From Ranitomeya imitator (taxonomy: Eukaryota), in NCBI RefSeq assembly GCF_032444005.1, contig NC_091282.1, positions 659,680,001 to 659,744,000 of the forward strand: a stretch of DNA of 64,000 nucleotides, written 5' to 3'. The notes below the pieces were generated by a model. It saw nothing but the letters and a program-made list of their open reading frames with translations, was not told the origin of the DNA and searched no databases. The translations under genes were made by a program, and so were the position numbers. Within the stretch, counting starts at the first letter, position 1. Each line of letters starts with the position of its first letter. This document shows positions 37,233-58,200 of the stretch, piece after piece.

Positions 37233-40200
37233 GTAAGCAAGGAAAGGGGCGTTTTTATCCTTGATTGTCATCTCCCAGTCGATGACTCTCTAAATTGCGC
37301 CATAGGTGATATTATTGGAGGGCAGCAGCAGACTCGGCGGGTGGATGCGTACCACACGGACTGAAGATGGCGCTGTGTTTGAACATGGACCCCGCGGGAT
37401 GCGGCCAGGAGGAGTGGTGGGGAGAAATACGCTGAGTATGGTGAGAGAATCAATATGCCGGCCACACCAGTCATCAGCCAAATATGCCTCATTGGTACAC
37501 TGTAACGACCCTGAAGCTCTTATAGTGATCCCATGTCTGACATCTTTTTTTCCTGCAGATCTCAGAGCTGGGACTTGAAGCAGATCTTCTTCCCGTGCTA
37601 AGGAGTCAACCGGCCGCCAAAAACCGCTACCTCTACGTCAACAAGTCACTACACAAGCTGCCGTCCAGTATAGGGTGAGTGCCTTCCGATGTCCAAATAT
37701 TACGTCACATCACAGGAAATACTACATTCACCTGCTTGTGTAATTATAGGGGCATCCTGCGTACCATCCCCCCCTTTTCAAGACCTCTATTCTTATGCGG
37801 TCTCCGGGACCTGACAGCCCCTCGAGGAACAAAGGAAGATGAGACCATCCATGATTTCTTCTCACGCCGGTTTGGAAAAGAGGTGACAATCCTATATATA
37901 GAGGGTGGTGTTATAATAGTTATATTCATCTACATAGTATTATAGCAGTTATATTCTTGTACATAGGAGCAGTATTATAGTAGTTATATTCTTGTACATA
38001 GGAGCAGTATTATAGTAGTTATATTCTTGTACATAGGGGCAGTATTATAGTAGTTATATTCTTGTACATAGGGGGCAGTATTATAGTAGTTATATTCTTG
38101 TACATAGGGGGCAGTATTATAATAGTTATATTCTTGTACATAGGGGCAGTATTATAGTAGTTATATTCTTGTACATAGGAGCAGTATTATAGTAGTTATA
38201 TTCTTGTACATAGGGGGCAATATTATAGTAGTTATATTCTTGTACATAGGAGCAGTATTATAGTAGTTATATTTTTGTGCGTAGAGGGCAGTATTATAGT
38301 AGTTATTCTTGTACATAGGGGAAGTATTATAGAAGTAATATTCTTGTACATATGGGCAGTATTATAGTAGTTATATTCTTGTACATAGGAGCAGTATTAA
38401 GCTGCTGTCACACTAGCAATATCTGGTCAGTATTTTACATCAGTATTTGTAAGCCAAAACCATGACTGGGTGATAAATGCAGAAGTGGTGCATATGTTTG
38501 TGTTATACTTTTCCTCTATTTGTTCCACTCCTGGTTTTGGCTTACAAATACTGATGTAAAATACTGACCAAATACTGCTAATGTGACGGCAGCCTTATAG
38601 TAGTTATATTCTTGTACATAGGGGCAGTATTATAGTAGTTATATTCTTGTACATAGGGGCAGTATTATAGTAGTTATATTCTTGTACATAGGGGCAGTAT
38701 TATCATAGTTATATTCTTGTACATAGGAGCAGTATTATAGTAGTCATATTCTTGTACATAGGAGCAGTATTATAGTAGTTATATCCTTGTACATAGGGGC
38801 AGTATTATAGTAGTTATATTCTTGTACATAGGAGCAGTGTTATAGTAGTTATATTCTTGTACATAGGAGCAGTATTATAGTAGTTATATCCTTGTACATA
38901 GGGGCAGTATTATAGTAGTTATATTCTTGTACATAGGAGGCAGTATTATAGTAGTTATATCCTTGTACATAGGGGCAGCATTATAGTAGTTATATTCTTG
39001 TACATAGGAGCAGTGTTATAGTAGTTATATTCTTGTACATAGGAGCAGTATTATAGTAGTTATATTCTTGTACATAGGGGCAGTATTATAGTAGTTACAT
39101 TCTTGTACATAGGAGCAGTATTATAGTAGTTATATTCTTGTACATAGGGGCAGTATTATAGTAGTTATATTCTTGTACATAGGAGCAGTATTATAGTAGT
39201 TATATTCTTGTACATAAGGGCTGTATTATTGTAGTTATATTCTTGTACATAGGAGCAGTATTATAGTAGTTATATTCTTGTACATAGGAGCAGTATTATA
39301 GTAGTTATATTCTTGTACATAGGAGCAGTATTATAGTAGTTATATTCCTGTACATAGGGGCAGTATTATAGTAGTTATATTCTTGTACATAGGAGCAGTA
39401 TTATAGTAGTTATATTCCTGTACATAGGGGCAGTATTATAGTAGGTATATTCTTGTACATAGGAGCAGTATTATTGTAGTTATATTCTTGTACATAGGAG
39501 CAGTATTATAGTAGTTATATTCCTGTACATAGGGGCAGTATTATAGTAGTTATATTCTTGTACATAGGAGCAGTATTATAGTAGTTATATTCTTGTACAT
39601 AAGGGCTGTATTATTGTAGTTATATTCTTGTACATAGGAGCAGTATTATAGTAGTTATATTCTTGTACATAGGAGCAGTATTATAGTAGTTATATTCTTG
39701 TACATAGGAGCAGTATTATAGTAGTTATATTCCTGTACATAGGGGCAGTATTATAGTAGTTATATTCTTGTACATAGGAGCAGTATTATAGTAGTTATAT
39801 TCCTGTACATAGGGGCAGTATTATAGTAGGTATATTCTTGTACATAGGAGCAGTATTATTGTAGTTATATTCTTGTACATAGGAGCAGTATTATAGTAGT
39901 TATATTCCTGTACATAGGGGCAGTATTATAGTAGTTATATTCTTGTACATAGGAGCAGTATTATAGTAGTTATATTCTTGTACATAGGGGCAGTATTATA
40001 GTAGTTATATTCTTGTACATAGGAGCAGTATTATAGTAGTTACATTCTTGTTCATAAGGGCTGTATTATTGTAGTTATATTCTTGTACATAGGGGCAGTA
40101 TTATAGTAGTTATATGCTTGTACATAGGAGCAGTATTATAGTAGTTATATTCTTGTACATTGGGGGCAATATTATAGTAGTTATATTCTTGTACATAGGG

Positions 40201-43200
40201 GCAGTATTATAGTAGTTATATTCTTGTACATAGGGGCAGTATTATAGTAGTTATATGCTTGTACATAGGAGCAGTATTATAGTAGTTATATTGTACATTG
40301 GGGCAATATTATAGTAGTTATATTCTTGTACATAGGAGCAGTATTATAGTAGTTATATTCTTGTACATAGGAGCAGTATTATAGTAGTTATATTTTTGTG
40401 CGTAGAGGGCAGTATTATAGTAGTTATTGTACATAGGGGAAGTATTATAGAAGTAATATTCTTGTACATATGGGCAGTATTATAGTAGTTATATTCTTGT
40501 ACATAGAAGCAGTATTAAGCGGCTGTCACACTAGCAATATTTGGTCAGTATTTTACATCAGTATTTGTAAGCCAAAACCAGGACTGGGTGATAAATGCAG
40601 AAGTGGTGCATATGTTTGTGTTATACTTTTCCTCTATTTGTTCCACTCCTGGTTTTGGCTTACAAATACTGATGTAAAATACTGACCAAATACTGCTAGT
40701 GTGACGGCAGCCTTATAGTAGTTATATTCTTGTACATAGCAGCAGTATTATTGTAGTTATATTCTTGTACATAGGGGGCAGTATTATAGTAGTTATATTC
40801 TTGTACATAGGAGTATTATAGTAGTTATATTCTTGTACATAGGGGCAGTATTATAGTAGTTATATTCTTATACATAGGGGGGCAGTATTATAGTAGTTAT
40901 ATTCTTGTACATAGGGGCAGTATTATAGTAGTTATATTCTTATACATAGGGGGGCAGTATTATAGTAGTTATATTCTTGTACATAGCAGCAGTATTATTG
41001 TAGTTATATTCTTGTACATAGGGGGCAGTATTATAGTAGTTATATTCTTGTACATAGGAGTATTATAGTAGTTATATTCTTGTACATAGGGGCAGTATTA
41101 TAGTAGTTATATTCTTATACATAGGGGGGCAGTATTATAGTAGTTATATTCTTGTACATAGGCGCAGTGTTATAGTAGAAACACCAAATAATATTCCTAC
41201 CAGGGTCATGAAGGAAATCATATAATACTACCGAAAAAGGACCTTCACACAAAGACCAAAATATAAAAACATATATAGTCTTTATTGAAACAAATCATTA
41301 AAAGCATACAATAAATAAATAATGCGACAGTAACCACTGATGCAGGACAGAAACAGTGGGACCCATACAGGAACCAACCTCAAAAAACAACAGTAGTACA
41401 GTGACAATAAACGGCTGGGTATAAGGAAATGGACATATATAATTAGGTAAAATACATCTAAAATGAATACGAGCCCTATAAGAGGAAATAGGCATGTATG
41501 ACAAATAGACCAAAGATCTAAAGTAAACCCAGACACATGATGGAAATACAGACTACTGCAAATAAAGTGATAAAGGCATAGTTACCTAGAGGAGGAACCC
41601 AGGGACCCATCTGTCCTGCATCAGTGGTTACTGTCGCATTATTTATTTATTGTATGCTTTTAATGATTTGTTTCAATAAAGACTATATATGTTTTTATAT
41701 TTTAGTCTTTGTGTGAAGGTCCTTTTTCGGTATTATGCAGTGTTATAGTAGTTATATTCTTGTACATAGAAGCAGTATTATAGTAGTTATATTCTTGTAC
41801 ATAGGGGCAGTATTATAGTAGTTATATTCTTGTACATAGGGGGCAGTATTATAGTAGTTATATTCTTGTACATAGGGGCAGTATTATAGTAGTTATATTC
41901 TTGTACATTGGGGCAGTATTATAGTAGTTATATTCTTGTACATAGGGGCAGTATTATAGTAGTTATATTCTTGTACATAGGAGCAGTATTATAGTAGTTA
42001 TATTATACATAGGGAGCAGTATTATAGTAGTTATATTCTTGTACGTAGGAGCAGTATTATATTAGTTATATTCTTGTACATAGGAGCAGTATTATTGTAG
42101 TTATATTCTTGTACATAGGGGCAGTATTATCTATATATAATTGTCTAAGGAGTACTTTCGTCTATTGGTCTGTCTCTCTGTAACGGAAATCCCGCGTTGC
42201 TGATTGGTCGCGGCCGGCCAGCCGCGACCAATCAGCGACGGGCACAGTCCGGCCGCGAATTTGCCCTTCCCCACTCCCCTCCAGTCAGTGCCCCCTCCCT
42301 ACTCCCCAGTCAGTGCCCCCTCCCTACTCCCCAGTCCGTGCCCCGATAGCATTTTAGCAGTCCGTTAAACCGACTGCGTTACAACGCGGCATAACGCGGT
42401 GTAACGCACTCTGTTAACGCTGCTATTAACCCTATCAAAAACCTCCCAAAAATGGACACAGTACCAAAGTATCAAAAACCACTGTATTAGGGGCGTGGCT
42501 TGCAAGGGACTGGGAGCAGACCTGTGTCACAGGAGCTCCTGCTAAATCCCTTATTATAAGCGGCAATTTGCTTACTTTTCTGGGAAGAAAGTGCTTAAAA
42601 CTTATGCTAAAGAGTCCAGGACTTGGATACATAATGGAAAAATCGGCTTTCAAGAAGGCACAAGCAACTCAGGGACGTGCGGTCCCCAGCCGCGGCCTTG
42701 CTGCAGGACTGCACAGTAGGGAGGACGAGAGGCTGCACTCATCGGTGCTTTCAAGCCCCAGTTCAAGACCCAGACCAAGCTCATCCACGGGTGGACTCCT
42801 GGACAGACTCCCGTCCACAGCGGCTCCCGCTCTGAAAATTACAAGGCCCTCCGGTTTCCCCACAAGAATTGGAGCGACTTGCCTGGATAGGCCCAAAGCC
42901 ACGGTCTCGCCTAAACTGACGAGGCCGGGAAGCAGGAGAGGGGAGGAGACCACGCCCACAGACCTGCCCTCGGCTCCGCCCGCGACACGCAGCGGCGCCG
43001 CCCCTTGAGGACGGAGCCGCAACCAAGCAGCGGCGAAGACATCAGGTGAGCCGATGCCTCACTCACCCAGAGCTGCAGGACTACCGGGACCCTTCGTTCG
43101 CCGCTCACAAGCCAGCGCGACTTCCAGGATCAGACTGCAGGCGCCGGGGAGAAGAGACGGAGCTGGAGCCCCGCCCACAACTCCGCCCACATCTAGCGGC

Positions 43201-46200
43201 GGTACCGCTCCTGGAGAGGAGAGATCTGCCGCAGCTGCAAGTGGAAAGTCAGGTGAGCTCTTAAAGCAAGCGTCACCCACTCTGAAGCCTCTTAGACCCT
43301 CTGCCCCAGCCCCCCAGACCGGCACAACACCTAGGATCATAGCGGCAGCTGCGTCTATGTCGGCGGGGAGGGGGAGCAGGGGAAGGGAGGAAACTCCGCC
43401 CACTAATCGGCACACAGCTTGTAACATGAACATTACATCCAGGGATGCAGGGATAAAAGCTGTCAGCCGAGTACTAAATTATGACGCCCCAGAATTTGTG
43501 CCCCATTCCAGTAACCAGATGATGGAGGGGGCTTAAAACTGTCATCCCAAAAGCATTCACGGCCAAACCGGAAGGTGCATTATATTCAAGTTACAATACA
43601 CTAAATGCACAAGAGCAGAGTCCTAATGACTCTTCCAACAAGAAGGGGGGGAGGATCCCATCTCAAAGTCTTCATGCTCTTCCCCTGTTATGGAGGAGAA
43701 AATAGCTCTCACTATAGCGTCTATAGACAATATGATGAGCGATTTCTGCGACAACTTTAACAAAAAATTGAAGGAACAATTACAATTCCGATTACCAGAT
43801 TCAGTTTTTTTTTTTTAAACCACCAAATTCGGGATCTTCCTATTCGGATACAGCATCAGAGTCATACATAAAAGATGCGTTGACCTCTATTGCGGAAAGC
43901 TTGGGTTCCTCCTCATCTTTATCTTCTTCAAGATCATCTGTCTGCGATCATTATTCTTCATCTACACATGACTCACACGAACCCTCTGTAGTCTCTTCGG
44001 ACAGTAGTGTGGAGGACTTTTCCCCTGAGCGTAGTGATCTTCCCCACTCAGATACCTTTCCAACTCTTAACATGTCCTCTGCCTTACTAGACAGTATGCA
44101 AAGAGACATAGACTCACTCAAACGTAACCTGGCGACTCTCGAGGATCACAGACGTAGAAATAACGTGAAGATTAGGGGCGTCCCGGAATCCATTAAACCC
44201 CCTCATTTGAAAAACTACGTTCACAAAATGATTTCTAAATTCTTTCCTGACCTTAATGATCCCAATATTATAGAAAGAGTCTACAGAATTAAAAGACCTG
44301 TGTACCTCCCATCAGATGTGCCAAGAGACATTATTGTCTCCTTTTTTCCAGCCTGGGTCAGGGGTAAACTGTTTGACCTCTCCTCCGAAAAAAGTTTTCT
44401 GCTCTCCCCTTGTGGCCACCTAACATTTTTCAGAGACTTGTCTAAGGATACCTTGAAAAAACGACGTGATTTTTCATCCATCACTCGGGAACTCCGGAGG
44501 TCCCATTTTGCGTATTCATGGTCGCCCTCCTCCACTATTTTGGTGAAACTTCTGACTGGAACTGAACATATTGCAACTCCGGAGGAGGGTATGATCTTTC
44601 TGCAGAGACATGGTCTGAATCCTCCTAGATTCCCCACCGCTCCTACTTGACCTGGAGTCCTGTCCCATATATAAAATCATTTATTATTACTACGCTTATA
44701 AGTCAAATTTATTTTTCTTCCCAACAATTAGCCTTGATACTGAGCCGGACTTTTTGCCCACATTGTCACGGGACCATCAGGAGGTGTTCCCGAACACGAC
44801 AAGCTACTATCTGCGTTATATTAAGCTTAGAGTCCATGACGGGCACTCTATTTTTATAGCCTACCTTCTAATGTTTATTTGGCGAATCTGTACAAAGCAT
44901 TACTCATGTTAGTTTATAGCCTACCATGTCATTTTATTTTATGCAAAAAAAAAGGGAAGAAGCCAGCACTGCTTATGGTCAGAACGCAATAACTGAAGTG
45001 CAATTGCACATAAATTCTAACTGTATTTCAAATATGAGACATTTAGCAAACAATTGATCAATTCTTTGAGCTACCCCGCCACTTCACGGCAATCTCATAA
45101 TGGGGCAGTCCTAATCTTCGTATTTTATTTACGTTGTGCCATTATGGCTTCCTGAATGTATAAAAAAAAAAAAAAAAAAAAAGGACCACATTAAATGCGA
45201 ACTGTACCTGGAGCATTTTCAGAATCACTCCCTTGGTGCCAGGAAAGGCAAGCGCAGGTAAAGGCCGATCAGGTCCAGTGCGGACATTTCAGATCTGGCA
45301 TCCACACTGCCAAACCCGCACCAAAGATGAAGGGTGAGACAGGCTGAGACACAGGTGCACAACTAACTTGAGCCTGAGGCGGGGCAGGGCTGCTGTGTGT
45401 GTGCACAGCAGCCTATCAATCACAGTGAACACAGAAAGAATGGCGCACATAACCCAGCGTGCGCGGCAACAGTGGTGGTCAGCCACATACCAATGCAAAG
45501 CAAAAAAAAAGGGAAGAAGCCAGCACTGCTTATGGTCAGAACGCAATAACTGAAGTGCAATTGCACATAAATTCTAACTGTATTTCAAATATGAGACATT
45601 TAGCAAACAATTGATCAATTCTTTGAGCTACCCCGCCACTTCACGGCAATCTCATAATGGGGCAGTCCTAATCTTCGTATTTTATTTACGTTGTGCCATT
45701 ATGGCTTCCTGAATGTATAAAAAAAAAAAAAAAAAAAAAAAAAGGACCACATTTTTTTATACATTCAGGAAGCCATAATGGCACAACGTAAATAAAATAC
45801 GAAGATTAGGACTGCCCCATTATGAGATTGCCGTGAAGTGGCGGGGTAGCTCAAAGAATTGATCAATTGTTTGCTAAATGTCTCATATTTGAAATACAGT
45901 TAGAATTTATGTGCAATTGCACTTCAGTTATTGCGTTCTGACCATAAGCAGTGCTGGCTTCTTCCCTTTTTTTTTATTTTATTTTATGACAGAACTAGAT
46001 GTTTACTTAGCGAATCTTCACAAAGCATTACTTATACTATCCTATAGCCTACTATGTACATCATTTAAGCTATTATGTTTACACTAATCTACTATATGTT
46101 TGCCTGTTTCCCCTATTGTTATAGGGGCTTATTTTCCCTACCTCCATATCCCACCCTTCCTCTCCGTCCCTTCCTAGCTTTTCCTGCCCGGTTAAAAAGT

Positions 46201-49200
46201 TATAATTCCAATAAAAATTATTTGAAAAAAAAAACCCACTGTATTAAATAGTTTATTAAATATATTTGAAGATTAAAAAATGGAGAAACTGACAAAATAG
46301 TCCACAATAAATATCACATTACACAAAAAACATCATATAGGGTGCAGATCAAATAAACATACTAGACAATAATCCCCAAAGAGACAGACCTATTGGTCAA
46401 ATGCATATGTCATAAGTGGTCTAACACAAGACCAAATAAAGTACAGAAAAAGTCTCTAAGTCAATATCAGTACCAGTGTAGAGATGATCCGTCGTTCCCC
46501 TGGACTCCAGCTCCAACATACGTTTCGCCACCGTGGCTTTTTCAAGGAGTCCTTACTTTATTTGGTCTTGTGTTAGACCACTTATGACTTATGCATTTGA
46601 CCAATAGGTCTGTTTCTTTGGGGATTATTGTCTAGTATGTTTATTTGATCTGCACACTATTTGATGTTTTTTATGTACTGTGATATTTATTGTGGACTAT
46701 TTTGTCAGTTTCTCCATTTTTTAATCTTCAAATATATTTAATAAACTATTTAATACAGTGTTTTTTGATACTTTGGTACTGTGTCCAATTTTGAGAGGTT
46801 TTTGATATAGTTGTAGGACATTTTGCAATAGTGTGAGCTTCTCTCACGTGGTTGTGTATTGAGCTGCTATTAACCCTGTGTGACCAACTTTTTACTATTG
46901 ATGCTGCCTATGCAGCATCAATAGTAAAAAGATCTAATGTTAAAAATAATAAAAAAAAAAAAAAATCATTATATTCTCACCTTCCAGTGCCTTTCCCGCT
47001 CCTCGCGACGCTCCGATCCCAAGAATGCATTGCGGCAATGACCGGACATGATGTAGCGGTCTCGCGAGATGATGACGTAGCGGTCTCGCGTATTCTTGGG
47101 ACCGGAGCGTCGCGAGAAGCATCGCTAAACACCTGGGCTGGATCCGGGGGCCGCTGGAAGGTGAGTATATAACAATTTTTTATTTTAAGTCTTTTTTTAA
47201 CAGGGATATGGTGCCCACATTGCTATATACTACATGGGCTGTGTTATATACTATGTGGGCTCTGTTATATACTGCATGGGCTGTATTATATACTGCGTGG
47301 CCTGTGTTATATACTACGTCTCTGTGCTATATACTACGTGGCTGTGCAATATACTAAGACAGGCAATTAACAGTAAATAGAAAGCATTTGCACTACTAAA
47401 GCAGGATGGCACCATTGAAGCTCTAAAAAACTATTCACGGTGGAAAATGAAATGCTAGGTGTAATCCCAAGAAACAATGAAAACCCTATATTAAGGGTCA
47501 CCAATCTAACCCAAGAAGAGGTGCGAAACCGGCTAAATAAGATTAAAATAGATAAATCTCCGGGTCCGGATGGCATACACCCACGAGTACTAAGAGAACT
47601 AAGTAATGTAATAGATAAACCATTATTTCTTATTTTTAGGGACTCTATAGCGACAGGGTCTGTTCCGCAGGACTGGCGCATAGCAAATGTGGTGCCAATA
47701 TTCAAAAAGGGCTCTAAAAGTGAACCTGGAAATTATAGGCCAGTAAGTCTAACCTCTATTGTTGGTAAAATATTTGAAGGGTTTCTGAGGGATGTTATTC
47801 TGGATTATCTCAATGAGAATAACTGTTTAACTCCATATCAGCATGGGTTTATGAGAAATCGCTCCTGTCAAACCAATCTAATCAGTTTTTATGAAGAGGT
47901 AAGCTATAGGCTGGACCACGGTGAGTCATTGGATGTGGTATATCTCGATTTTTCCAAAGCGTTTGATACTGTGCCGCACAAGAGGTTGGTACACAAAATG
48001 AGAATGCTTGGTCTGGGGGAAAATGTGTGTAAATGGGTTAGTAACTGGCTTAGTGATAGAAAGCAGAGGGTGGTTATAAATGGTATAGTCTCTAACTGGG
48101 TCGCTGTGACCAGTGGGGTACCGCAGGGGTCGGTATTGGGACCTGTTCTCTTCAACATATTCATTAATGATCTGGTAGAAGGTTTACACAGTAAAATATC
48201 GATATTTGCAGATGATACAAAACTATGTAAAGCAGTTAATACAAGAGAAGATAGTCTTCTGCTACAGATGGATCTGGATAAGTTGGAAACTTGGGCTGAA
48301 AGGTGGCAGATGAGGTTTAACAATGATAAATGTAAGGTTATACACATGGGAAGAAGGAATCAATATCACCATTACACACTGAATGGGAAACCACTGGGTA
48401 AATCTGACAGGGAGAAGGACTTGGGGATCCTAGTTAATGATAAACTTACCTGGAGCAGCCAGTGCCAGACAGCAGCTGCCAAGGCAAACAGGATCATGGG
48501 GTGCATTAAAAGAGGTCTGGATACACATGATGAGAGCATTATACTGCCTCTGTACAAATCCCTAGTTAGACCGCACATGGAGTACTGTGTCCAGTTTTGG
48601 GCACCGGTGCTCAGGAAGGATATAATGGAACTAGAGAGAGTACAAAGGAGGGCAACAAAATTAATAAAGGGGATGGGAGAACTACAATACCCAGATAGAT
48701 TAGCGAAATTAGGATTATTTAGTCTAGAAAAAAGACGACTGAGGGGCGATCTAATAACCATGTATGAGTATATAAGGGGACAATACAAATATCTCGCTGA
48801 GGATCTGTTTATACCAAGGAAGGTGACGGGCACAAGGGGGCATTCTTTGCGTCTGGAGGAGAGAAGGTTTTTCCACCAACATAGAAGAGGATTCTTTACT
48901 GTTAGGGCGGTGAGAATCTGGAATTGCTTGCCTGAGGAGGTGGTGATGGCGAACTCAGTCGAGGGGTTCAAGAGAGGCCTGGATGTCTTCCTGGAGCAGA
49001 ACAATATTGTATCATACAATTATTAGGTTCTGTAGAAGGACGTAGATCTGGGGATTTATTATGATGGAATATAGGCTGAACTGGATGGACAAATGTCTTT
49101 TTTCGGCCTTACTAACTATGTTACTATGTGGCTGTGTTATATACTGCATTGTTATGATGCGGTGGTCTAGGAGCAACATGGAACGAGCTCTGAAGGAAGT

Positions 49201-52200
49201 GGTAACTGTACTGACCGCAGTCTCTAAGCTCTACACAACATTAGAAGTAGCCGTGGAATGCTCCTAACTCTCCCTAGGCATCTCGTCACAGCCTAAGAGC
49301 TAACTACCCCTAAAGACAGAAGCAGGAAAACTATCTTGCCTCAGAGAAAATCCCCAAAGGATAGATTAGCCCCCCACAAATAATGACTGTGAGTGGAGAG
49401 GAAAAAGACATACACAGAATTAAACCAGGATGAGCACAGGAGGCCAGTCTAGCTTGATAGATAGGACAGGATGGCATACTGTGCGGTCAGTAAAAAACAC
49501 TACAAAAATCCACGCAGAGTTTACAAAAAAATCTCCACACCTTAATAAAGGTGTGGAGGGTAAATCTGCTTCCCAGAGCTTCCAGCAAGACAGAATTTAT
49601 TCATACTGATAACGCTGGACAAACATAGAAAGCACTGAACGGATAAGTCCACAATCTGTGAACAGAAAAGCGCAAGCAAAAACTTAGCTTTGCTGAACTG
49701 GTCAGGAAAACAGGGAAATCCAAAGAGATGTGAATCCAACCAGGAACCATTTACAAGTGGCACTGGCTGAAGGAACAGCCAGGCCTAAATAGCCGAGCAG
49801 AAGAGACGATAAGTGGAGGCAGCTGATGACAGCTAACTCCAAGGAGCAGCCATACCACTCGAAACCACAAGACGGAGCCCAAGAGCAGAACTCACAAAAG
49901 TGCCACTTACAACCACCGGAGGGAGCCCAAGAGCGGAATTCACAACACTGCATGGCCTGTGTTATATACTGCGTGGCTTGTGTTATATACTACGTCTCTG
50001 TACTATATACTACATAGGCTATGTTATATACTACGTGGGCTGTGTTATATACTACGTGGCTGTGCTATATACTACGTGGCTGTGTTATATACTACGTGGC
50101 CTGTTATTATATACTACTCTGTACTATATACTACGTGGCTGTGCTATATACTACGTGGGCTGTGCTATATACTACGTGGTTGTGCTATATACTACGTGGG
50201 CTGTGCTATATACTACGTGGGCTGTGTTATATGCTACGTGGCTGGGCAATATACTACGTGGTTGTGCTATATACTATGTGGCTGGGCAATATATTACGTG
50301 GCCTGTGTTATATACTATGTGGCTGTGCTATATACTACGTGGCTGTGCAATATAATACGTGGCTGTGCTATATACTACGTGGCCTGTGTTATATACCAAG
50401 TGGGCTGTGTTATATACTACGTAGGCTGTGTTATATACTGCATGGGCTGTGCTGTATACTAGTATACATATTCTAGAATACCCAATGCGTTAGAATCGGA
50501 CCACCATCTAGTAGTAGTTATATTCTTGTACATAGGGGCAGTATTATAGTAGTTATATTCTTGTACAAAGGAGCAGTATTATAGTAGTTATATTCTTGTA
50601 TATAGGGGCAGTATTATAGTAGTTATATTCTTGTACATAGGGGGCAGTGATTATAGTAGTTACTAGATGGTGGCCCGATTCTAACGCATCGGGTATTCTA
50701 GAATATGTATGTATGTATGTGTATAGCAGCCACATAGTATATAGCACAGGCCACGTAGAATATAGGAGCCATGTAGTATATAGCAGACAAATACTACGTG
50801 GCCTGTGCTATATACTATGTGGCTGCTATATACATACATACATACATATTGTAGAATACCCGATGCGTTAATACTGGCCACGCAATATATAACAGTGGCC
50901 ACGCAGTATTTAACACAGCCCAAACAGTATGTAACACAGCCCACGCATTATATAGCAGGCTCGCAGTATATAACACAGGCTATGTAGTATATAACACAGA
51001 CCATGCAGTATATAACACTGGCCACGTAATATATAGCACAGCCCATGCAGTACATAACACAGCCCACATAGTATCTAACACTGGCCACGTAGTATATAGC
51101 AGCCACGCGGTATATAACGCAGCCCACTCGGTATATAACACTGCCCACGTAGTATATAGCAGTGTGGGCACATATCCCTGTTAGAAAAAAATAATTAAAA
51201 TAAAAAATACTTATATACTCACCCGCCAGGATCCAGCGAAGCTCTGGCGATGCGCGGCTGCTGCCATCTTCCGTTCCCAGGATGCATTGCGAAATGACAC
51301 AGATGACGTAGCGGGTCATTATAGTAGTTATAATCTTGTACATAGGGGCAGTATTATGCTAGTTATATTCTTGTACAAAGGCGCAGCATCATAGTAGTTA
51401 TATTCTTGTACATAGGAGCAGTATTATAGTAGTTATATTCTTGTACATAGAAGCAGTATTATAGTAGTTATATTCTTGTACATAGAAGCAGTATTATAGT
51501 AGTTATATTCTTGTACATAGAAGCAGTATTATAGTAGTTATATTCTTGTACAAAGGGGCAGTATTATAGTAGTTATATTCTTGTTCATAGCAGTATAATA
51601 GTAGTTATATTCTTGTACATGGGGCAGTATTATAGTAGTTATATTCTTGTACATAGGGGGCAGTATTATAGTAGTTATATTATTGTACATAGGAGCAGTA
51701 TTATAGTAGTTTTATTCTTGTACATAGGAGCAGTATTATAATAGTTATATTCTTGTACATAGGAGCAGTATTATAGTAGTTATATTCTTGTACATAGGGG
51801 CAGTATTATAGTAGTTATATTCTTGTACAAAGGGGTAGTATTATAGTAGTTATATTCTTGTACATAGGGGGCAGTACTATAGTAGTTATATTCTTGTACA
51901 TAGAGGCAGTATTATAGTAGTTATATTGTGTACTTTGGAGCAGTATTATAGTATTTATATTGTTGTACATAGTAGCAGTATTATGGTAATTATATTCTTA
52001 TACATAGGAGCAGTATTATAGTAGTTATATTCTTGTACATAGGGGCAGTATTATAGTAGTTATATTCTTGTACATAGGAGCAGTATTATAGTAGTTATAT
52101 TCTTGTACATAGGGGCAGTATTATAGTAGTTATATGCTTGTACATAGGGGCAGTATTATAGTAGTTATATTCTTGCACATAGGGGCAGTATTATAGTAGT

Positions 52201-55200
52201 TATATATTCAGGTACCCGCTTATATTACATAGTCCGTTCCTCCTCTATATGATTCAGTACACACGTGGCTGCAGGCTGTAATCCTTATCTCCTCCTTTCC
52301 TGTCATGTACAGTTAGGTCCATATATATTTGGACAGAGACAACATTTTTCTAATTTTGGTTATAGACATTACCACAATGAATTTTAACCCCTTAGTGACA
52401 GAGCCAATTTGGTACTTAATGACCAGGCCAATTTTTGCAATTCTGACCACTGTCACTTTATGAGGTTATAACTCTGGAACGCTTCAACAGATCCCGCTGA
52501 TTCTGAGATTGTTTTTTCGTGACATATTGTACTTCATGTTAGTGGTAACATTTCTTCGATATTACTTGCGATTATTTATGAAAAAAACGGAAATATGGTG
52601 AAAATTTTTAAAATTTTGCAATTTTCAAACTTTGTATTTTTATGCCCTTAAATCAGAGAGATATGTCATAAAAAATAGTTAATAAATAACATTTCCCACA
52701 TGTCTACTTTACATCAGCACAATTTTGGAAACAAAATTTTTTTTTGTTAGGGAGTTATAAGGGTTAAAAGTTGACCAGCAATTTCTCATTTTTACAACAC
52801 CATTTTTTTTTAGGGACCACATCACATTTGAAGTCATTTTGAGGGGTCTATATGATAGAAAATAATGAAGTGTGACACCATTCTAAAAACTACACCCCTC
52901 AAGGTTCTCAAAACCACATTCAAGAAGTTTATTAACCCTTTACGTGCTTCACAGGAACTGAAACAATGTGGAAGGAAAAAATGAACATTTAACTTTTTTT
53001 TGCAAACATCTTAATTCAGAACCATTTTTTTTATTTTCACAAGTGTAAAAACAGAAATGTAACCATAAATTGTGTTATGCAATTTCTCCTGAATACGCCA
53101 ATACCCCACATGTGGGGGTAAACCACTGTTAGGGCGCACCGCAGAACTTAGAAGTGAAGGAGCGCCGTTTGACTTTTTCAATGCAGAATTGGCTGGAATT
53201 GAGATCGGACACCATGTCACATTTAGAGAGCCCCTGATGTACCTAAACAGTGGAAACTCCCCACAAGTGACACCATTTTGGAAACTAGACCCCTTAAGGA
53301 ACTTATCTAGATGTGTGGTGAGCACTTTGAACCCCCAAGTGCTTCACAGAAGTTTATAACGTAGAGCCGTGAAAATAAAAAATCGCTTTTGTTTACACAA
53401 AAATGATCTTTTTGCCCACAAATTCTTATTTTCACAAGGGTAACAGGAGAAATTAGACCACAAAAGTTGTTGTGCAATTTCTCCTGAGTACGCTGATACC
53501 CAATATGTGGGGGTAAACAACTGTTAGGGCGCACCGCAGAGCTTGGAAGAGAAGGAGTGCCGTTTTACTTTTTCAATGTAGAATTGGCTGGAATTGAGAT
53601 TGGACGCCATGTCGCGTTTGGAGAGCCCCTGATGTGCCTAAACAGTGGAAACCCCCCACAAGTGACACCATTTTGGAAACTAGACCCCTTAAGGAACTTA
53701 TCTAGATGTGTGGCGAGCACTTTGAACCCCCATGTGCTTCACAGAAGTTTATAACGTAGAGCCGTGAAAAAAAAAATTGCATTTTTTCTACAAAAATTAT
53801 CTTTTTGCCCACAAATTTTTATTTTCACAAGGGTAACAGGAGAAATTAGACCACAAAAGTTGTTGTGCAATTTCTCCTGAGTACGTCGATACCCAATATG
53901 TGGGGGTAAACCACTGTTTGGGCGCACCGCAGAGCTTGGAAGAGAAAGAGTGCCGTTTTACTTTTTCAATGTAGAATTGGCTGGAATTGAGATCGGACGC
54001 CATGTCGCGTTTGGAGAGCCCCTGATGTGCCTAAACAGTAGAAATCCCCCACAAGTGACCCCATTTTGGAAACTAGACCCCCCATGGAACTTATCTAGAT
54101 GTGTGGTGAGAACCTTGAATGCCCAAGTGCTTCACAGAAGTTTATAATGCAGAGCCGTGAAAATAAAAAATATTTTTTTTTTCCACAAAAAAGATTTTTT
54201 AGCCACCAAATTTTTATTTTCACAAGGGTAACAAGAGAAACTGGACCCCAAAAGTTGTTGTCCAATTTGTCCTGAGTATGCTGGTACCCCATATGTGGGG
54301 GTAAACCACTGTTTGGGCGCACGGCAGAGCTCGGAAGGAAGGAGCGCCGTTTTGGAATGCAGACTTTGATAGAATGGTCTGCGGGTATTATGTTGCGTTT
54401 GCAGAGCCCCTGATGTACCTAACCAGTAGAAACCCTCCACAAGTGACCCCATTTTGGAAACTAGACCCCCCAAGGAACTTATCTAGATGTGTGGTGAGAA
54501 CTTTGAATGCCCAAGTGCTTCACAGAAGTTTAGAATGCAGAGTCGTGAAAATAAAAAATATTTTTTTTTCCACAAAAAAGATATTGTAGCCCCCAAGTTT
54601 TTATTTTCACAAGGGTAACAGGAGAAATTGGACTGCAATAGTTGTTGTCCAATTTATCCCGAGTACGCTGATGCGCCATATGTGGCGGTAAACCACTGTT
54701 TGGGCGCACGGCAGAGCTCGGAAGGGAAGGAGCGCCTTTTTGGAATGCAGACTTTGATAGAATGGTCTGTGGGCATTATGTTGCGATTGCAGAGCCCCTG
54801 ATGTACCTAAACTGTAGTAACCCCCCACAAGTGACCCCATTTTGGAAACTAGACCCCCCAAGGAACTTATCTAGATGTGTGGTGAGAACTTTGAATGCCC
54901 AAGTGCTTCACAGAAGTTTAGAATGCAGAGTCGTGAAAATAAAAAATATTTTTTTTTTCACAAAAAAGATTTTGTAGCCCCCAAGTTTTTATTTTCACAA
55001 GGGTAACAAGAGAAATTGGACCCCAGAAGTTGTTGTCCAATTTATCCCGAGTACGCTGATGCCCCATATGTGGGGGTAACCCACTGTTTGGGCGCACGGC
55101 AGAGCTCAGAAGGGAGGGAGCACCATTTGACTTTTTGAGCGCAAAATTGGCTGTCGTGTTTGGAGACCCCCTGATGTACCTAAACAGTGGAAACCCCCCA

Positions 55201-58200
55201 ATTCTAGCTCCAACCCTAACCCCAACACACCCCTAACCCTAATCCCAACCTCATCCATAATCCTAATCACTAACCCTAACCATAATCACAACCCTTACCC
55301 CAAAACAACCCTAATGTCAACCCTAACCATAACCCTAATCAAAACCCTAAATCCAACACACCCCTAATCCTAATCTCAACCCTAACCTCAAACCTAACCC
55401 TAATCCCAATACACCCCTAATCACAACCCTAACCTTAACCCTAATCCCAAACCTAACCCTAATCCCAAGCGTAACCCTAATGCCAACCCTAACCCTAATA
55501 CGAACCCTAATCCAAACCCTAACCCTAATCCCAGCTCTAACCCTAACTTTAGCCCCAACCCTAGCCCTAACTTTAGCCCCAACCCTAACCCTAGCCCTAG
55601 GGCTACTTTCACACTTGCGTCGTTTGGCATTCCGTCGCAATCCGTCGTTTTGGACAAGAAACGGATCCTGCAAATGTGCCCGCAGGATGCGTTTTTTGCC
55701 CATAGACTTGTATTGCCGATGGATCGTGACGGATGGCCACACGTCGCGTCCGTCGTGCACTGGATCAGTTGTGTTTTGGCGGAGCGTCGGCACAAAAAAA
55801 CGTTCAATGAAACGTTTTTTTGTACGTCGCATCCGCCATTTCTGACCGCGCATGCGTGGCCGTAACTCCGCCCCCTCCTCCCCAGGACATAGATTGGGCA
55901 GCGGATGTGTTGAAAAACTACAGCTGCTGCCCACGTTGTGCACAATTTTCACAACGTGCGTCGGTATGTCGGGCCGACGTATTGCGACGGCCCCGTACCG
56001 ACGTAAGTGTGAAAGAAGCCTAACCCTAAATTTAGCCCCAACCCTAACCCTAAATTTAGCCCCAACCCTAACCCTAAATTTAGCCCCAACCTTANNNNNN
56101 NNNNNNNNNNNNNNNNNNNNNNNNNNNNNNNNNNNNNNNNNNNNNNNNNNNNNNNNNNNNNNNNNNNNNNNNNNNNNNNNNNNNNNNNNNNNNNNNNNNN
56201 NNNNNNNNNNNNNNNNNNNNNNNNNNNNNNNNNNNNNNNNNNNNNNNNNNNNNNNNNNNNNGCTGTTCTCCTGCCGGCCGGCAGATGGAGACAGATGGCG
56301 GGCGCACTGGGCATGCGTCCGCCATGTTCTGCTGCCGGCGGCCAGGAGGAGCAGCAAGAGGATCCAGGGACCTAGGTGAGTATGCTAGGGTCCCCGAATC
56401 CCCCTATTTCTCTGTCCTCTGATGTGCGATCACATCAGAGGACAGAGAATTACACTTTACTTTTTTTTTTTTTTGCGGTCGCCGGTAAACAGTTAATTAC
56501 CGGCGATCGCAAAACAGGGGTCGGTAATACCGACCCCGATCGTGCTCTTTGGGGTCTCGGCTACCCCCGGCAGCCGAGACCCCAAAGATTCTCCCGGTGC
56601 CGGCCGGCGGGCGCACTGCGCATGCGCCCGCCATTTTGAAGATGGCGGCACCCACCGGGAGACACGAGGAGCATCGGGGGAGCTAGGTGAGTATTGGGGG
56701 GCCACCTGGGACCCCTTTTCTCTGTCCTCCGATGTGCGATCACATCGGAGGACAGAGAAATTAAAAAGAGATCGCTTTTTTTTTTTTTGCGATCGCCGGT
56801 AAACGGTTAATTACCGGCGATCGCAAATGCGGGGTGGGTTAAAAACCCCCCAAATCATGTTCTCTGGGGTCTCGGCTACCCTCGGCAGCCGAGACCCCGG
56901 AGAAAATCGGCCTCTGGGGGGCGCTATGGACTTTTTCCACAGCGCCGTTAATTAACGGCGCTGTGGTTTAAGTACCCTTAGCGGCCGCCGTTAAAAGGCG
57001 TATCGGCGGTCGCTAAGGGGTTAAACAAAACAATTCAGATGCAGTTGAAGTTCAGACTTTCAGCTTTCATTTGAGGGTATCCAGATTAAAACTGGATGAA
57101 GGGTTTAGGAGTTTACGCTCCTTAACATGTGCAACCCTGCTTTTAAAGAGACCAAAAGTAATTGGACAAGTGACTCCAAGGCTATTTCATGGACAGGTGT
57201 GGGCAATCCCTTTGTTATGTCATTCTCAATTAAGCAGATAAAATGCCTGGAGTTGATTTGAGGTGTGGTGCTTGCATTTGGAAGGTTTTGCTGTGAAGTA
57301 AACATGCGGTCAAAGGAGCTCTCCATGCAGGTGAAACAAGCCATCCTTAGGCTGCGAAAACAGAAAAAACCCATCCGAGAAATTGCTGCAATATTAGGAG
57401 TGGCAAAATCTACAGTTTGGTACATCCTGAGAAAGAAAGAAAGCACTGGTGAACTCATCAATGCAAAAAGACCTGGGAACCCACAGAAGACAACAGTGGT
57501 GGATGATCGCAGAATAATCTCCATGGTGAAGAGAAACCCCTTCACAACAGCCAACCAAGTGAACAACACTCTCCAGGAGGTAGGCCTATCAATATCCAAA
57601 TCTACCATAAAGAGAAGACTGCATGAAAGAAAATACAGAGGGTTCACTGCACGGTGCAAGCCACTCATAAGCATCAAGAATAGAAAGGCTAGACTGGACT
57701 TTGCTAAAAAACATCTAAAAAAGCCAGCACAGTTCTGGAAGAACATTCTTTGGACAGATGAAACCAAGATCAACCTCTACCAGAATGATGGAAAGAGAAA
57801 AGTATGGTGAAGGCGTGGTACAGCTCATGATCCAAAGCATACCACCTCATCTGTAATACACGGCGGAGGCAGTGTGATGGCTTGGGCATGCATGGCTGCC
57901 AGTGGCACTGGGTCACTAGTGTTTATTGATGATGTGACACAGGACAGAAGCAGCCGAATGAATTCTGAGGTATTCAGAGCCGCCATACTGTGCTCAGATC
58001 CAGCCAAATGCAGCCAAACTGATCGTCGTTTCATACTTCTGATGGACAATAACTCAAAACATAAAGCCAAAGCAACCCAGAGGTTTATTAAAGCAAAGAA
58101 GTGGAATATTCTTGAATGGCCAAGTCAGTCACCTGATCTCAACCCAATTGAGCATGCATTTCACTTGTTAAAGACTAAACTTCAGACAGAAAGGCCCACA

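What the first reader, a model, noticed from the sequence alone, without database searches (positions are those of the whole stretch)
46511..46549. Minimal hammerhead-ribozyme-like motif with compensatory U3-A8 core in the loop of a foldback element
Seen (minus strand): CTCC | UUGAAAA+A | GCCAC-G-GUGGC | GAAAC-GUAU-GUU | GGAG, with a further GGACTCC/GGAGTCC pairing outside, centred between 253-bp inverted arms. Known: the canonical core is C3 U4 G5 A6 N7 G8 A9; C3-G8 is a Watson-Crick pair and U3-A8 swaps occur naturally; Penelope-like elements and retrozymes carry minimal type I hammerheads with reduced stem III, thought to act as dimers. Inference: both changes preserve the 3-8 pair, which suggests selection; predicted cleavage after GUU at 46515. 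Caveats: one extra A before stem II and only a 2-bp stem III.
Basis: partly seen in the sequence, partly recalled or inferred. Interest (0 to 1): 0.8.

Follow-up and report, generated by a model that had tools for sequence, protein, structure and literature searches.

The report
Penelope-type minimal hammerhead motif in frog
The hammerhead-like RNA motif is really there and is most likely the known "minimal hammerhead" that Penelope-like jumping genes carry, sitting at the start of an old, non-coding 364-base copy in a frog genome; it is an ordinary member of a described class, and whether it cuts itself is untested.

Summary
The motif is present exactly as read (minus strand, 46549 to 46511). 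It has an open helix I, a UUGAAAA core plus one extra A, a 4-bp helix II, GAAA, a 2-bp helix III, and GUU before the predicted cut.

The two "caveats" are published traits of Penelope-like-element (PLE) minimal hammerheads: a U3-A8 core, and an unpaired base between A9 and G10.1 (PMC4209133).

The "foldback" is one PLE-style insertion inside an exact 14-bp target duplication. It holds a 364-nt minus-strand copy that begins at the motif, an inverted 5'-truncated 254-nt copy, and a 55-nt tail. A later poly(A) insertion with an 11-bp duplication split one arm. With it removed, the arms are 254 nt and 96.5% identical.

Contigs from two frog species labels pile up on the motif far more than on the arms. 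No majority variant shows in the core. At 46518 most copies make helix III palindromic.

Against: no Rfam hammerhead model matches. This copy is old and differs from most copies. The retroposed RNA carried the motif uncut. No copies could be fetched, so covariation is untested, and so is cleavage.

Ten earlier first-reader notes (unchecked) report U3-A8 minimal hammerheads in Penelope-like ends or remnants elsewhere in this genome.

Verdict: a new member of a known kind, of low interest.

The parts
46511..46549 (-). Minimal type I hammerhead-like motif. Helix I: 46549-46546 paired with 46514-46511. Core U3 U4 G5 A6 A7 A8 A9: 46545-46539. Extra unpaired A: 46538. Helix II: 46537-46534 paired with 46530-46527, loop 46533-46531. 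G12 A13 A14: 46526-46524. Helix III: A46523-U46516 and C46522-G46517, loop 46521-46518. U17: 46515. The predicted cut lies between 46515 and 46514.
   Evidence: Direct reading. Only descriptor hit in the window. Helices I and II appear in the minimum-free-energy fold of the 49-nt stretch.
46236..46553 (-). Proximal 318 nt of the longer (364-nt) minus-strand copy. The motif is at its 5' end, followed by 67 nt of unique sequence and then the arm, which carries an AATAAA.
   Evidence: Alignments. A diverged contig (X5 record 19) spans the arm-to-spacer junction, while other contigs lose similarity at 46550/46551.
42433..42478 (-). Last 46 nt of the same minus-strand copy, separated from the rest by a later insertion.
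   Evidence: 57-nt inverted match between 42433-42489 and 46751-46807 at 95%. The joined arm aligns without gaps, 245 of 254 identical.
46554..46807 (+). Inverted, 5'-truncated 254-nt copy, joined head-to-head to the longer copy at 46553/46554.
46808..46862 (+). 55-nt extension ('tail') present at this end of the insertion only. Other genomic copies continue for about 30 nt of it.
   Evidence: It lies between the end of the arm and the target duplication. Contigs X3 records 15 and 16 run on to 46837/46838.
42419..42432 (.). Left copy of the 14-bp target-site duplication GCTGCTATTAACCC.
   Evidence: Exact repeat. The flank continues the same abundant repeat that resumes at 46863 (loose ends).
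46863..46876 (.). Right copy of the 14-bp target-site duplication.
42490..46235 (+). Later poly(A)-ended 3.7-kb insertion that split the minus-strand arm. It is flanked by an exact 11-bp duplication CCACTGTATTA (42479-42489 and 46236-46246). It is not part of the hammerhead element, but it is needed to read the element.

Best explanation
The motif is a minimal hammerhead of the kind carried by Penelope-like retroelements (PLEs), in the variant where the core pair C3-G8 is replaced by U3-A8. It occupies nt 5-43 of a 364-nt non-coding PLE-derived RNA.

How the DNA got there:
- Shown: the target was cut with a 14-bp stagger.
- Inferred from the anatomy and from published PLE biochemistry: both DNA ends primed reverse transcription near the RNA's 3' end. 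One cDNA ran to the RNA's 5' end (364 nt) and the other stopped at 254 nt. They were joined head-to-head, with a tail left at one end.

What the motif does (inferred, not shown): in the parent elements, two such motifs pair through their palindromic helix III. With help from protein or chaperones, they slowly cut multimeric transcripts after GUU.

This copy is old: its arms are 3.6% diverged. It differs from most copies at 46518. It is probably weak or inactive on its own.
For: 1. Motif hallmarks. All four descriptor-independent hallmarks listed for PLE minimal hammerheads are present:
- an unpaired base between A9 and G10.1;
- the G10.1-C11.1 pair;
- a short helix I;
- a palindromic 15.2-loop3-16.2 in most family copies, where 46518 is G on the + strand in 32 of the X3 contigs and 68 of the X12 contigs.
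The U3-A8 core is documented in Schistosoma PLEs. Sources: PMC4209133 read; sequence; contigs.

2. Insertion anatomy. It matches the published PLE pattern (PMC8557442; PMC11167929): an exact 14-bp TSD, an inverted 5'-truncated copy abutting the 5' end of the longer copy, and a tail at one end only.

3. Chance given the context. The relaxed descriptor would fall by chance in the sense strand of a given 364-nt unit about 3e-6 of the time (derived).

4. Conservation. Contig depth peaks on 46510-46551, at about 2,500 against about 150 in the arms, in DNA runs of two species labels. No majority variant is listed in the core or in helix II. The flank 46476-46510 shows six common variants.

5. Fold. 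Helices I and II form in the minimum-free-energy fold.
Against: - No Rfam hammerhead model matches, even at E<=10 on 76 nt.
- The fold is no more stable than shuffled sequences (z = -0.81).
- The predicted dimer pairs through helix II, not helix III.
- Helix II is 4 bp, not the 6-8 bp typical of the published PLE families.
- There is no RT or GIY-YIG ORF in the unit. The nearby RT (47440-49026) is LINE/CR1-type and unrelated.
- This copy and many others start at 46550/46551 with the motif intact, so their RNA templates were not cut at it.
- Covariation in the helices could not be tested: the list of minor variants was truncated and no copies could be fetched.
- All sequencing runs were contigs, so RNA ends are unknown.
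Confidence: 0.75

Rival explanations
1. Chance look-alike: an A-rich stretch next to a short GC hairpin in transposon-derived DNA happens to satisfy a relaxed hammerhead pattern.
For: - The relaxed descriptor is expected 1.2e-3 times per window. That is about one chance hit in the 754 windows read in this genome and hundreds over the whole scan.
- There is no Rfam match.
- There is no thermodynamic signal.
- Three relaxations were needed: U3, A8 and an insertion.
Against: - The motif sits in the sense strand of a unit independently recognised as a Penelope-style insertion.
- It has the G10.1-C11.1 pair and a palindromic helix III in most copies. Neither was part of the pattern used to find it.
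- It is the most abundantly held segment of the repeat in two species labels.
Confidence: 0.1
2. The motif is a true descendant of the Penelope hammerhead that is kept for something other than cis-cleavage. Possibilities are a 5' structure bound by the element's RT/endonuclease, or part of an internal promoter. Cutting would play no role in retroposition.
For: - Copies begin 2-3 nt before helix I and carry the whole motif, so uncut RNA was the template.
- For the Anolis Poseidon element, hammerhead mutants did not change insertion in vitro, cleavage needed the protein, and no RNA-seq reads ended at the cut site (PMC11167929).
- PLE clades without hammerheads proliferate well (PMC8557442).
Against: - The features that are kept (core boxes, the compensated 3-8 pair, G10.1-C11.1, palindromic helix III) are the ones that catalysis needs.
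- Fungal and plant PLE hammerheads cleave well (PMC4209133).
- No binding or promoter data exist for this element.
Confidence: 0.12
3. The abundant 75-nt segment is the 3' end of a plus-strand LINE-like element with a terminal stem-loop, and the hammerhead reading on the minus strand is incidental.
For: - Depth rises towards 46551 and stops sharply there, as a 5'-truncation gradient towards a plus-strand 3' end would.
- The flanks beyond 46551 are A-rich and diverse.
Against: - A diverged paralogous contig (X5 record 19, about 90% identity) runs from the minus-strand arm into the segment. The segment therefore belongs to the minus-strand unit, whose 3' end with AATAAA lies at the other side.
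- There is no microsatellite or poly(A) tail at 46551.
Confidence: 0.03

Closest known systems
Minimal hammerheads (min-HHRs) of Penelope-like elements, U3-A8 variant (Cervera & de la Pena 2014, PMC4209133)
   Same: - Type I topology with a short open helix I.
- U3-A8 core.
- One unpaired base between A9 and G10.1.
- G10.1-C11.1 pair.
- Minimal helix III with a palindromic 15.2-loop-16.2 in most family copies.
- Mostly dispersed single motifs in truncated elements.
- Amphibian genomes are known to hold thousands (about 9,000 in Xenopus tropicalis).
   Different: - Helix II is 4 bp with a 3-nt loop, against 6-8 bp.
- The U3-A8 form was reported for a flatworm PLE (Cercyon); here it is in a frog.
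- The cleavage triplet is GUU.
- In this copy the palindrome is weakened to G-U wobbles.
Animal non-LTR retrozymes / newt satellite-2 hammerheads (PMC7229834; bioRxiv 10.64898/2026.07.22.740005)
   Same: - A small (about 300-400 nt) non-coding unit with a type I hammerhead and an unstable helix III.
- Penelope-related.
- The amphibian mean unit length of 316 bp is close to the 364 nt seen here.
   Different: - Retrozymes are tandem arrays with a canonical CUGANGA core and loop-loop contacts in every unit.
- Here there is one motif, no tandem repeat, an open helix I and a variant core.
Penelope-like element insertion architecture (Craig et al. 2021, PMC8557442; PMC11167929)
   Same: - An inverted 5'-truncated copy abutting the 5' end of the main copy.
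- An extension ('tail') at one end only.
- A target duplication.
- Both target strands used as primers.
   Different: - There is no RT/GIY-YIG ORF and no direct pseudo-LTR in this unit.
- The tail is 55 nt, against the usual 30-40 nt.
Canonical hammerhead families of Rfam
   Same: A three-helix junction with GAAA and UH boxes.
   Different: Two invariant core positions are changed, there is one inserted base, and loop 1 is absent. None of the models matches it even at E<=10.

Membership tests
PLE minimal hammerhead (min-HHR) | Type I topology: open helix I, closed helices II and III around the three-way core | tested here: met
   Helix I is 4 bp (46549-46546 with 46514-46511). Helix II is 4 bp. 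Helix III is 2 bp.
PLE minimal hammerhead (min-HHR) | Core boxes: C3/U3 U4 G5 A6 N7 G8/A8 A9, G12 A13 A14, A15.1-U16.1, H17 | tested here: met
   UUGAAAA, GAAA, and U16.1 followed by U17. The U3-A8 form is the documented covariant (PMC4209133).
PLE minimal hammerhead (min-HHR) | [quoted passage not shown] | tested here: met
   A at 46538. Listed as a conserved hallmark in PMC4209133.
PLE minimal hammerhead (min-HHR) | G10.1-C11.1 closing pair of helix II | tested here: met
   G46537 pairs with C46527.
PLE minimal hammerhead (min-HHR) | Palindromic 15.2-16.2 and loop 3 (dimer-forming helix III) | tested here: met
   Nearly all contigs in four runs carry G at 46518 (+ strand), which gives ACGUACGU on the RNA strand. 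This copy reads ACGUAUGU, which still self-pairs through two G-U wobbles.
PLE minimal hammerhead (min-HHR) | Residence in the repeats or ends of a Penelope-like element | tested here: inconclusive
   The insertion anatomy is Penelope-style: 14-bp TSD, inverted truncated copy, one-sided tail. No RT/GIY-YIG ORF is attached, and the peptide searches found no PLE protein. Earlier notes placing the same core at Penelope ends are unchecked.
PLE minimal hammerhead (min-HHR) | Consensus families with compensatory changes in the helices | not testable with these tools
   No family copies could be retrieved. One search gives only majority variants: none in the core or helix II, plus a 1-nt insertion in loop 2 in two contigs.
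PLE minimal hammerhead (min-HHR) | Site-specific self-cleavage (as a dimer) | not testable with these tools
   All available runs are contigs, so no RNA ends can be seen. There is no bench test.
Rfam hammerhead families | Covariance-model score at or above the gathering threshold | tested here: not met
   No hammerhead match at the gathering threshold over the whole window, nor at E<=10 on 1 kb or on 76 nt.
Non-LTR retrozyme | Tandem units, each carrying a type I hammerhead | tested here: not met
   There is one motif in the window and no tandem repeat at this locus. The copies are inverted, and only one holds the motif.

The most novel reading that the evidence does not exclude
In this frog lineage the U3-A8 + extra-A minimal hammerhead may be a module shared by otherwise unrelated Penelope families. 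It marks the exact 5' end of the retroposed RNA and is copied uncut. If so, it may work mainly as an uncleaved 5' handle for the element's RT/endonuclease, or only in trans or as a dimer, rather than as a cis-processing ribozyme.
Probability: 0.12. Interest if true: 0.5.

Novelty: new member of a known kind. Interest (0 to 1): 0.22.

Why it matters
It adds a clean frog example of the U3-A8 minimal hammerhead, which was first described in flatworm Penelope elements. The locus keeps every junction of the insertion: the target duplication, the head-to-head joint and the tail.

It also shows that the RNA template carried the ribozyme motif intact at its very 5' end. That bears on the open question of whether Penelope hammerheads are needed for retroposition at all.

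It does not reveal a new kind of ribozyme or element.

Tried and rejected
- Rfam at three scales: no hammerhead match. I treat this as weak evidence against, since the published min-HHRs were themselves found with custom descriptors (PMC4209133), not with the Rfam models.
- Exact-pattern scan of metagenome contigs for the helix II to helix I stretch: 0 hits.
- Word-index protein searches with both open frames across the spacer, meant to reach other copies: no candidates. That tool only admits proteins of similar length, so long PLE ORFs were out of reach.
- Exhaustive HMMER search with the 43-aa minus-frame peptide, testing whether the motif overlaps the start of a PLE ORF as in the Anolis Poseidon element: only three hits, all repetitive proteins unrelated to PLEs. 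Rejected.
- The RT ORF at 47440-49026 as the element's own enzyme: rejected. It is on the other strand, of LINE/CR1 type (FADD, RVT_1), and lies outside the target duplication.
- A target duplication directly flanking the 213-nt arms: none of 7 nt or more. The true ends lie elsewhere.
- DNA-transposon reading of the 57-nt inverted ends: rejected, because of the 14-bp duplication, the one-sided 55-nt extension and the 254-nt arms.
- Supplementary files of PMC4209133, for Xenopus family sequences: not held. Lunse et al. 2017: not held.
- I did not build or fold a majority-rule version of the motif. I only compared copies position by position.

Full report
**Observation**

The minus strand from 46549 to 46511 reads CTCC / TTGAAAA / A / GCCA-CGG-TGGC / GAAA / C-GTAT-G / T / T / GGAG.

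- In hammerhead numbering this is helix I (4 bp), U3 U4 G5 A6 A7 A8 A9 and one extra A. Then come helix II (G10.1-C11.1 plus three more pairs, 3-nt loop), G12 A13 A14 and helix III (A15.1-U16.1 and C15.2-G16.2, loop GUAU). Last is U17, with the predicted cut between 46515 and 46514.
- The open helix is helix I, so the topology is type I.
- A descriptor I wrote finds this stretch and nothing else in the window. A much looser scan (core box, helix II of at least 3 bp, GAAA) also finds only this stretch.

**Chance**

- From the window's own composition, the relaxed descriptor (either core, 0-1 inserted base, helices of at least 4, 4 and 2 bp) is expected 1.2e-3 times per 64-kb window on both strands. 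The strict one is expected 3e-4 times.
- That is rare for one window. But it is close to one expected chance hit over the 754 windows already read in this genome, and hundreds over the whole scan. The match alone proves nothing.
- No Rfam hammerhead model matches it at the gathering threshold on the whole window. None matches at E<=10 on 1 kb or on 76 nt.
- The 66-nt fold is no more stable than shuffles (z = -0.81).
- In a 49-nt fold, helices I and II are part of the minimum-free-energy structure and helix III is not. The full hammerhead fold costs 2.2 kcal/mol more.

**What the literature says about the two 'caveats'**

Cervera and de la Pena (PMC4209133) defined minimal hammerheads of Penelope-like elements (PLEs).

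- They are type I, with helix I of 4-5 bp and a minimal helix III.
- They also report a U3-A8 covariant core in Schistosoma Cercyon PLEs (about 1,300 hits) and about 9,000 minimal hammerheads in Xenopus tropicalis.
- Activity in vitro was nil as monomers and low as dimers.

**The element**

The repeat finder gave 213-nt arms (46231-46443 and 46554-46766) around a 110-nt spacer. A separate 57-nt inverted match links 42433-42489 to 46751-46807. These fit together as follows.

- An exact 14-bp direct repeat, GCTGCTATTAACCC, lies at 42419-42432 and 46863-46876.
- The DNA outside it is one abundant hairpin-bearing repeat, split in two. Its upstream part ends at 42432, and its continuation at 46863 is what other copies show (loose ends).
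- An exact 11-bp repeat, CCACTGTATTA (42479-42489 and 46236-46246), flanks a 3.7-kb poly(A)-ended insertion (42490-46235). That insertion landed later in the left arm.
- With it removed, the insertion consists of three parts: a 364-nt minus-strand copy (46553 to 46236, then 42478 to 42433), an inverted 254-nt plus-strand copy (46554-46807), and 55 further bases (46808-46862) at that end only.
- The arms align without gaps, 245 of 254 identical (Jukes-Cantor distance 0.036).

The 3' ends of both copies, each with an AATAAA, face outward. The copies meet head-to-head at 46553/46554. This is the published Penelope pattern: high 5' truncation, an inverted 5'-truncated copy abutting the 5' end, and a 30-40-bp tail at one end (PMC8557442). 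It fits the finding that a purified Penelope protein cleaves and extends both target strands and starts reverse transcription at two internal sites (PMC11167929).

The motif lies in the sense strand at nt 5-43 of the longer copy. By chance, the relaxed descriptor would fall in the sense strand of a given 364-nt unit about 3e-6 of the time (derived). The co-occurrence of the two independent Penelope traits is the main argument.

**Other copies**

I laid contigs of four runs on 46000-47000 at 80% likeness. The runs were two DNA runs of different species labels and two runs guessed to be RNA.

- Summed contig depth is about 130-200 over the arms. It is 460-1,000 over 46476-46509 and about 2,500 over 46510-46551. 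Similarity ends sharply at 46550/46551: there are 17 loose-ended contigs in X12, and a 372-nt contig in X5 runs on into unlike sequence.
- A diverged contig (X5 record 19, about 90% identity) crosses from the minus-strand arm into the spacer. The spacer therefore belongs to the minus-strand unit. This argues against reading it as the 3' end of a plus-strand element.
- Within the motif, the only majority difference from the window is at 46518. It is G on the + strand in 32 X3 contigs and 68 X12 contigs, which makes the RNA read ACGUACGU, a perfect palindrome. The window's A lies in a former CpG.
- At 46509 and 46510, most organism-A contigs differ from the window. Those letters would extend helix I from 4 to 6 pairs. 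Most organism-E contigs agree with the window.
- Two X12 contigs carry a 1-nt insertion in loop 2.
- The flank 46476-46510 has six common variants.
- The variant list was truncated (52 rows hidden), so minor variants in the motif are unknown. Depth here is a k-mer sum, not a copy number.

**What could not be done**

- No family copies could be fetched: the metagenome pattern scan gave 0 hits, and the two word-index protein searches gave no candidates.
- An exhaustive HMMER search with the minus-frame peptide tested whether the motif overlaps a Penelope ORF start, as in Anolis. It returned only repetitive-protein artefacts.
- Covariation, the decisive computational test, is therefore open.
- All runs were contigs, so RNA ends, strand and cleavage cannot be seen.
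- The RT ORF at 47440-49026 is LINE/CR1-type and lies outside the target duplication.

**Mechanism**

- Shown: the motif, the insertion anatomy, the two target duplications, the relative age, and the enrichment of the motif segment.
- Inferred: target-primed reverse transcription from both strands of a 14-bp staggered cut. The longer cDNA reached the RNA's 5' end, which lies 2-3 nt before helix I.
- The whole motif was copied here, and many copies share that end. So the templates were not cut at this motif.
- This agrees with published data that unprocessed RNA is the main insertion substrate and that cleavage is slow and protein-assisted. It leaves room for a non-catalytic role.

**Verdict**

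- This is a real Penelope-type minimal hammerhead motif of the U3-A8 variant, in an old non-coding copy. It is a new member of a known kind.
- Ten earlier first-reader notes report U3-A8 minimal hammerheads in Penelope-like ends or remnants elsewhere in this genome. They are unchecked and I did not count them as evidence.

Noticed in passing
window 42490-46235: A 3.7-kb poly(A)-ended retroposed insertion with an exact 11-bp target duplication (CCACTGTATTA) splits the left arm of the Penelope-style foldback. Its + strand ORFs of 146-256 aa have no Pfam match.
   Followed up: partly
window 44943-45192, 45500-45753, 45752-45975: Three copies of a roughly 224-254-nt unit: two direct (98% identical) and one inverted. 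The inverted pair (45502-45725 and 45752-45975) is 100% complementary around an A25 spacer. This is either a very young event or an assembly artefact.
   Followed up: no
window 46863-46934: A hairpin-bearing repeat (perfect 20-bp stem 46888-46907 with 46912-46931) that reaches contig depths in the millions in both frog DNA runs. It looks like a MITE-like family of extreme abundance, and it is the host of the Penelope-style insertion.
   Followed up: partly
window 47440-49026 (+): A 528-aa open ORF with an RVT_1 domain and a FADD motif (LINE/CR1-type reverse transcriptase). It lies between two blocks of the same 20/21-bp satellite (47221-47356 and 49947-50461), so it was probably inserted into that satellite.
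   Followed up: partly
window 55212-55599: An interstitial degenerate telomere-like array (AACCCT)n next to a 388-bp tandem repeat (53028-55153, 5.4 copies).
   Followed up: no
window 1-42130 and 50512-52205: Most of the window is satellite DNA with many periods: 30/120, 30, 34, 76, 41, 38/75 and 35 bp. The 35-bp array (37936-42130) resumes at 50512, so everything between is inserted material.
   Followed up: no
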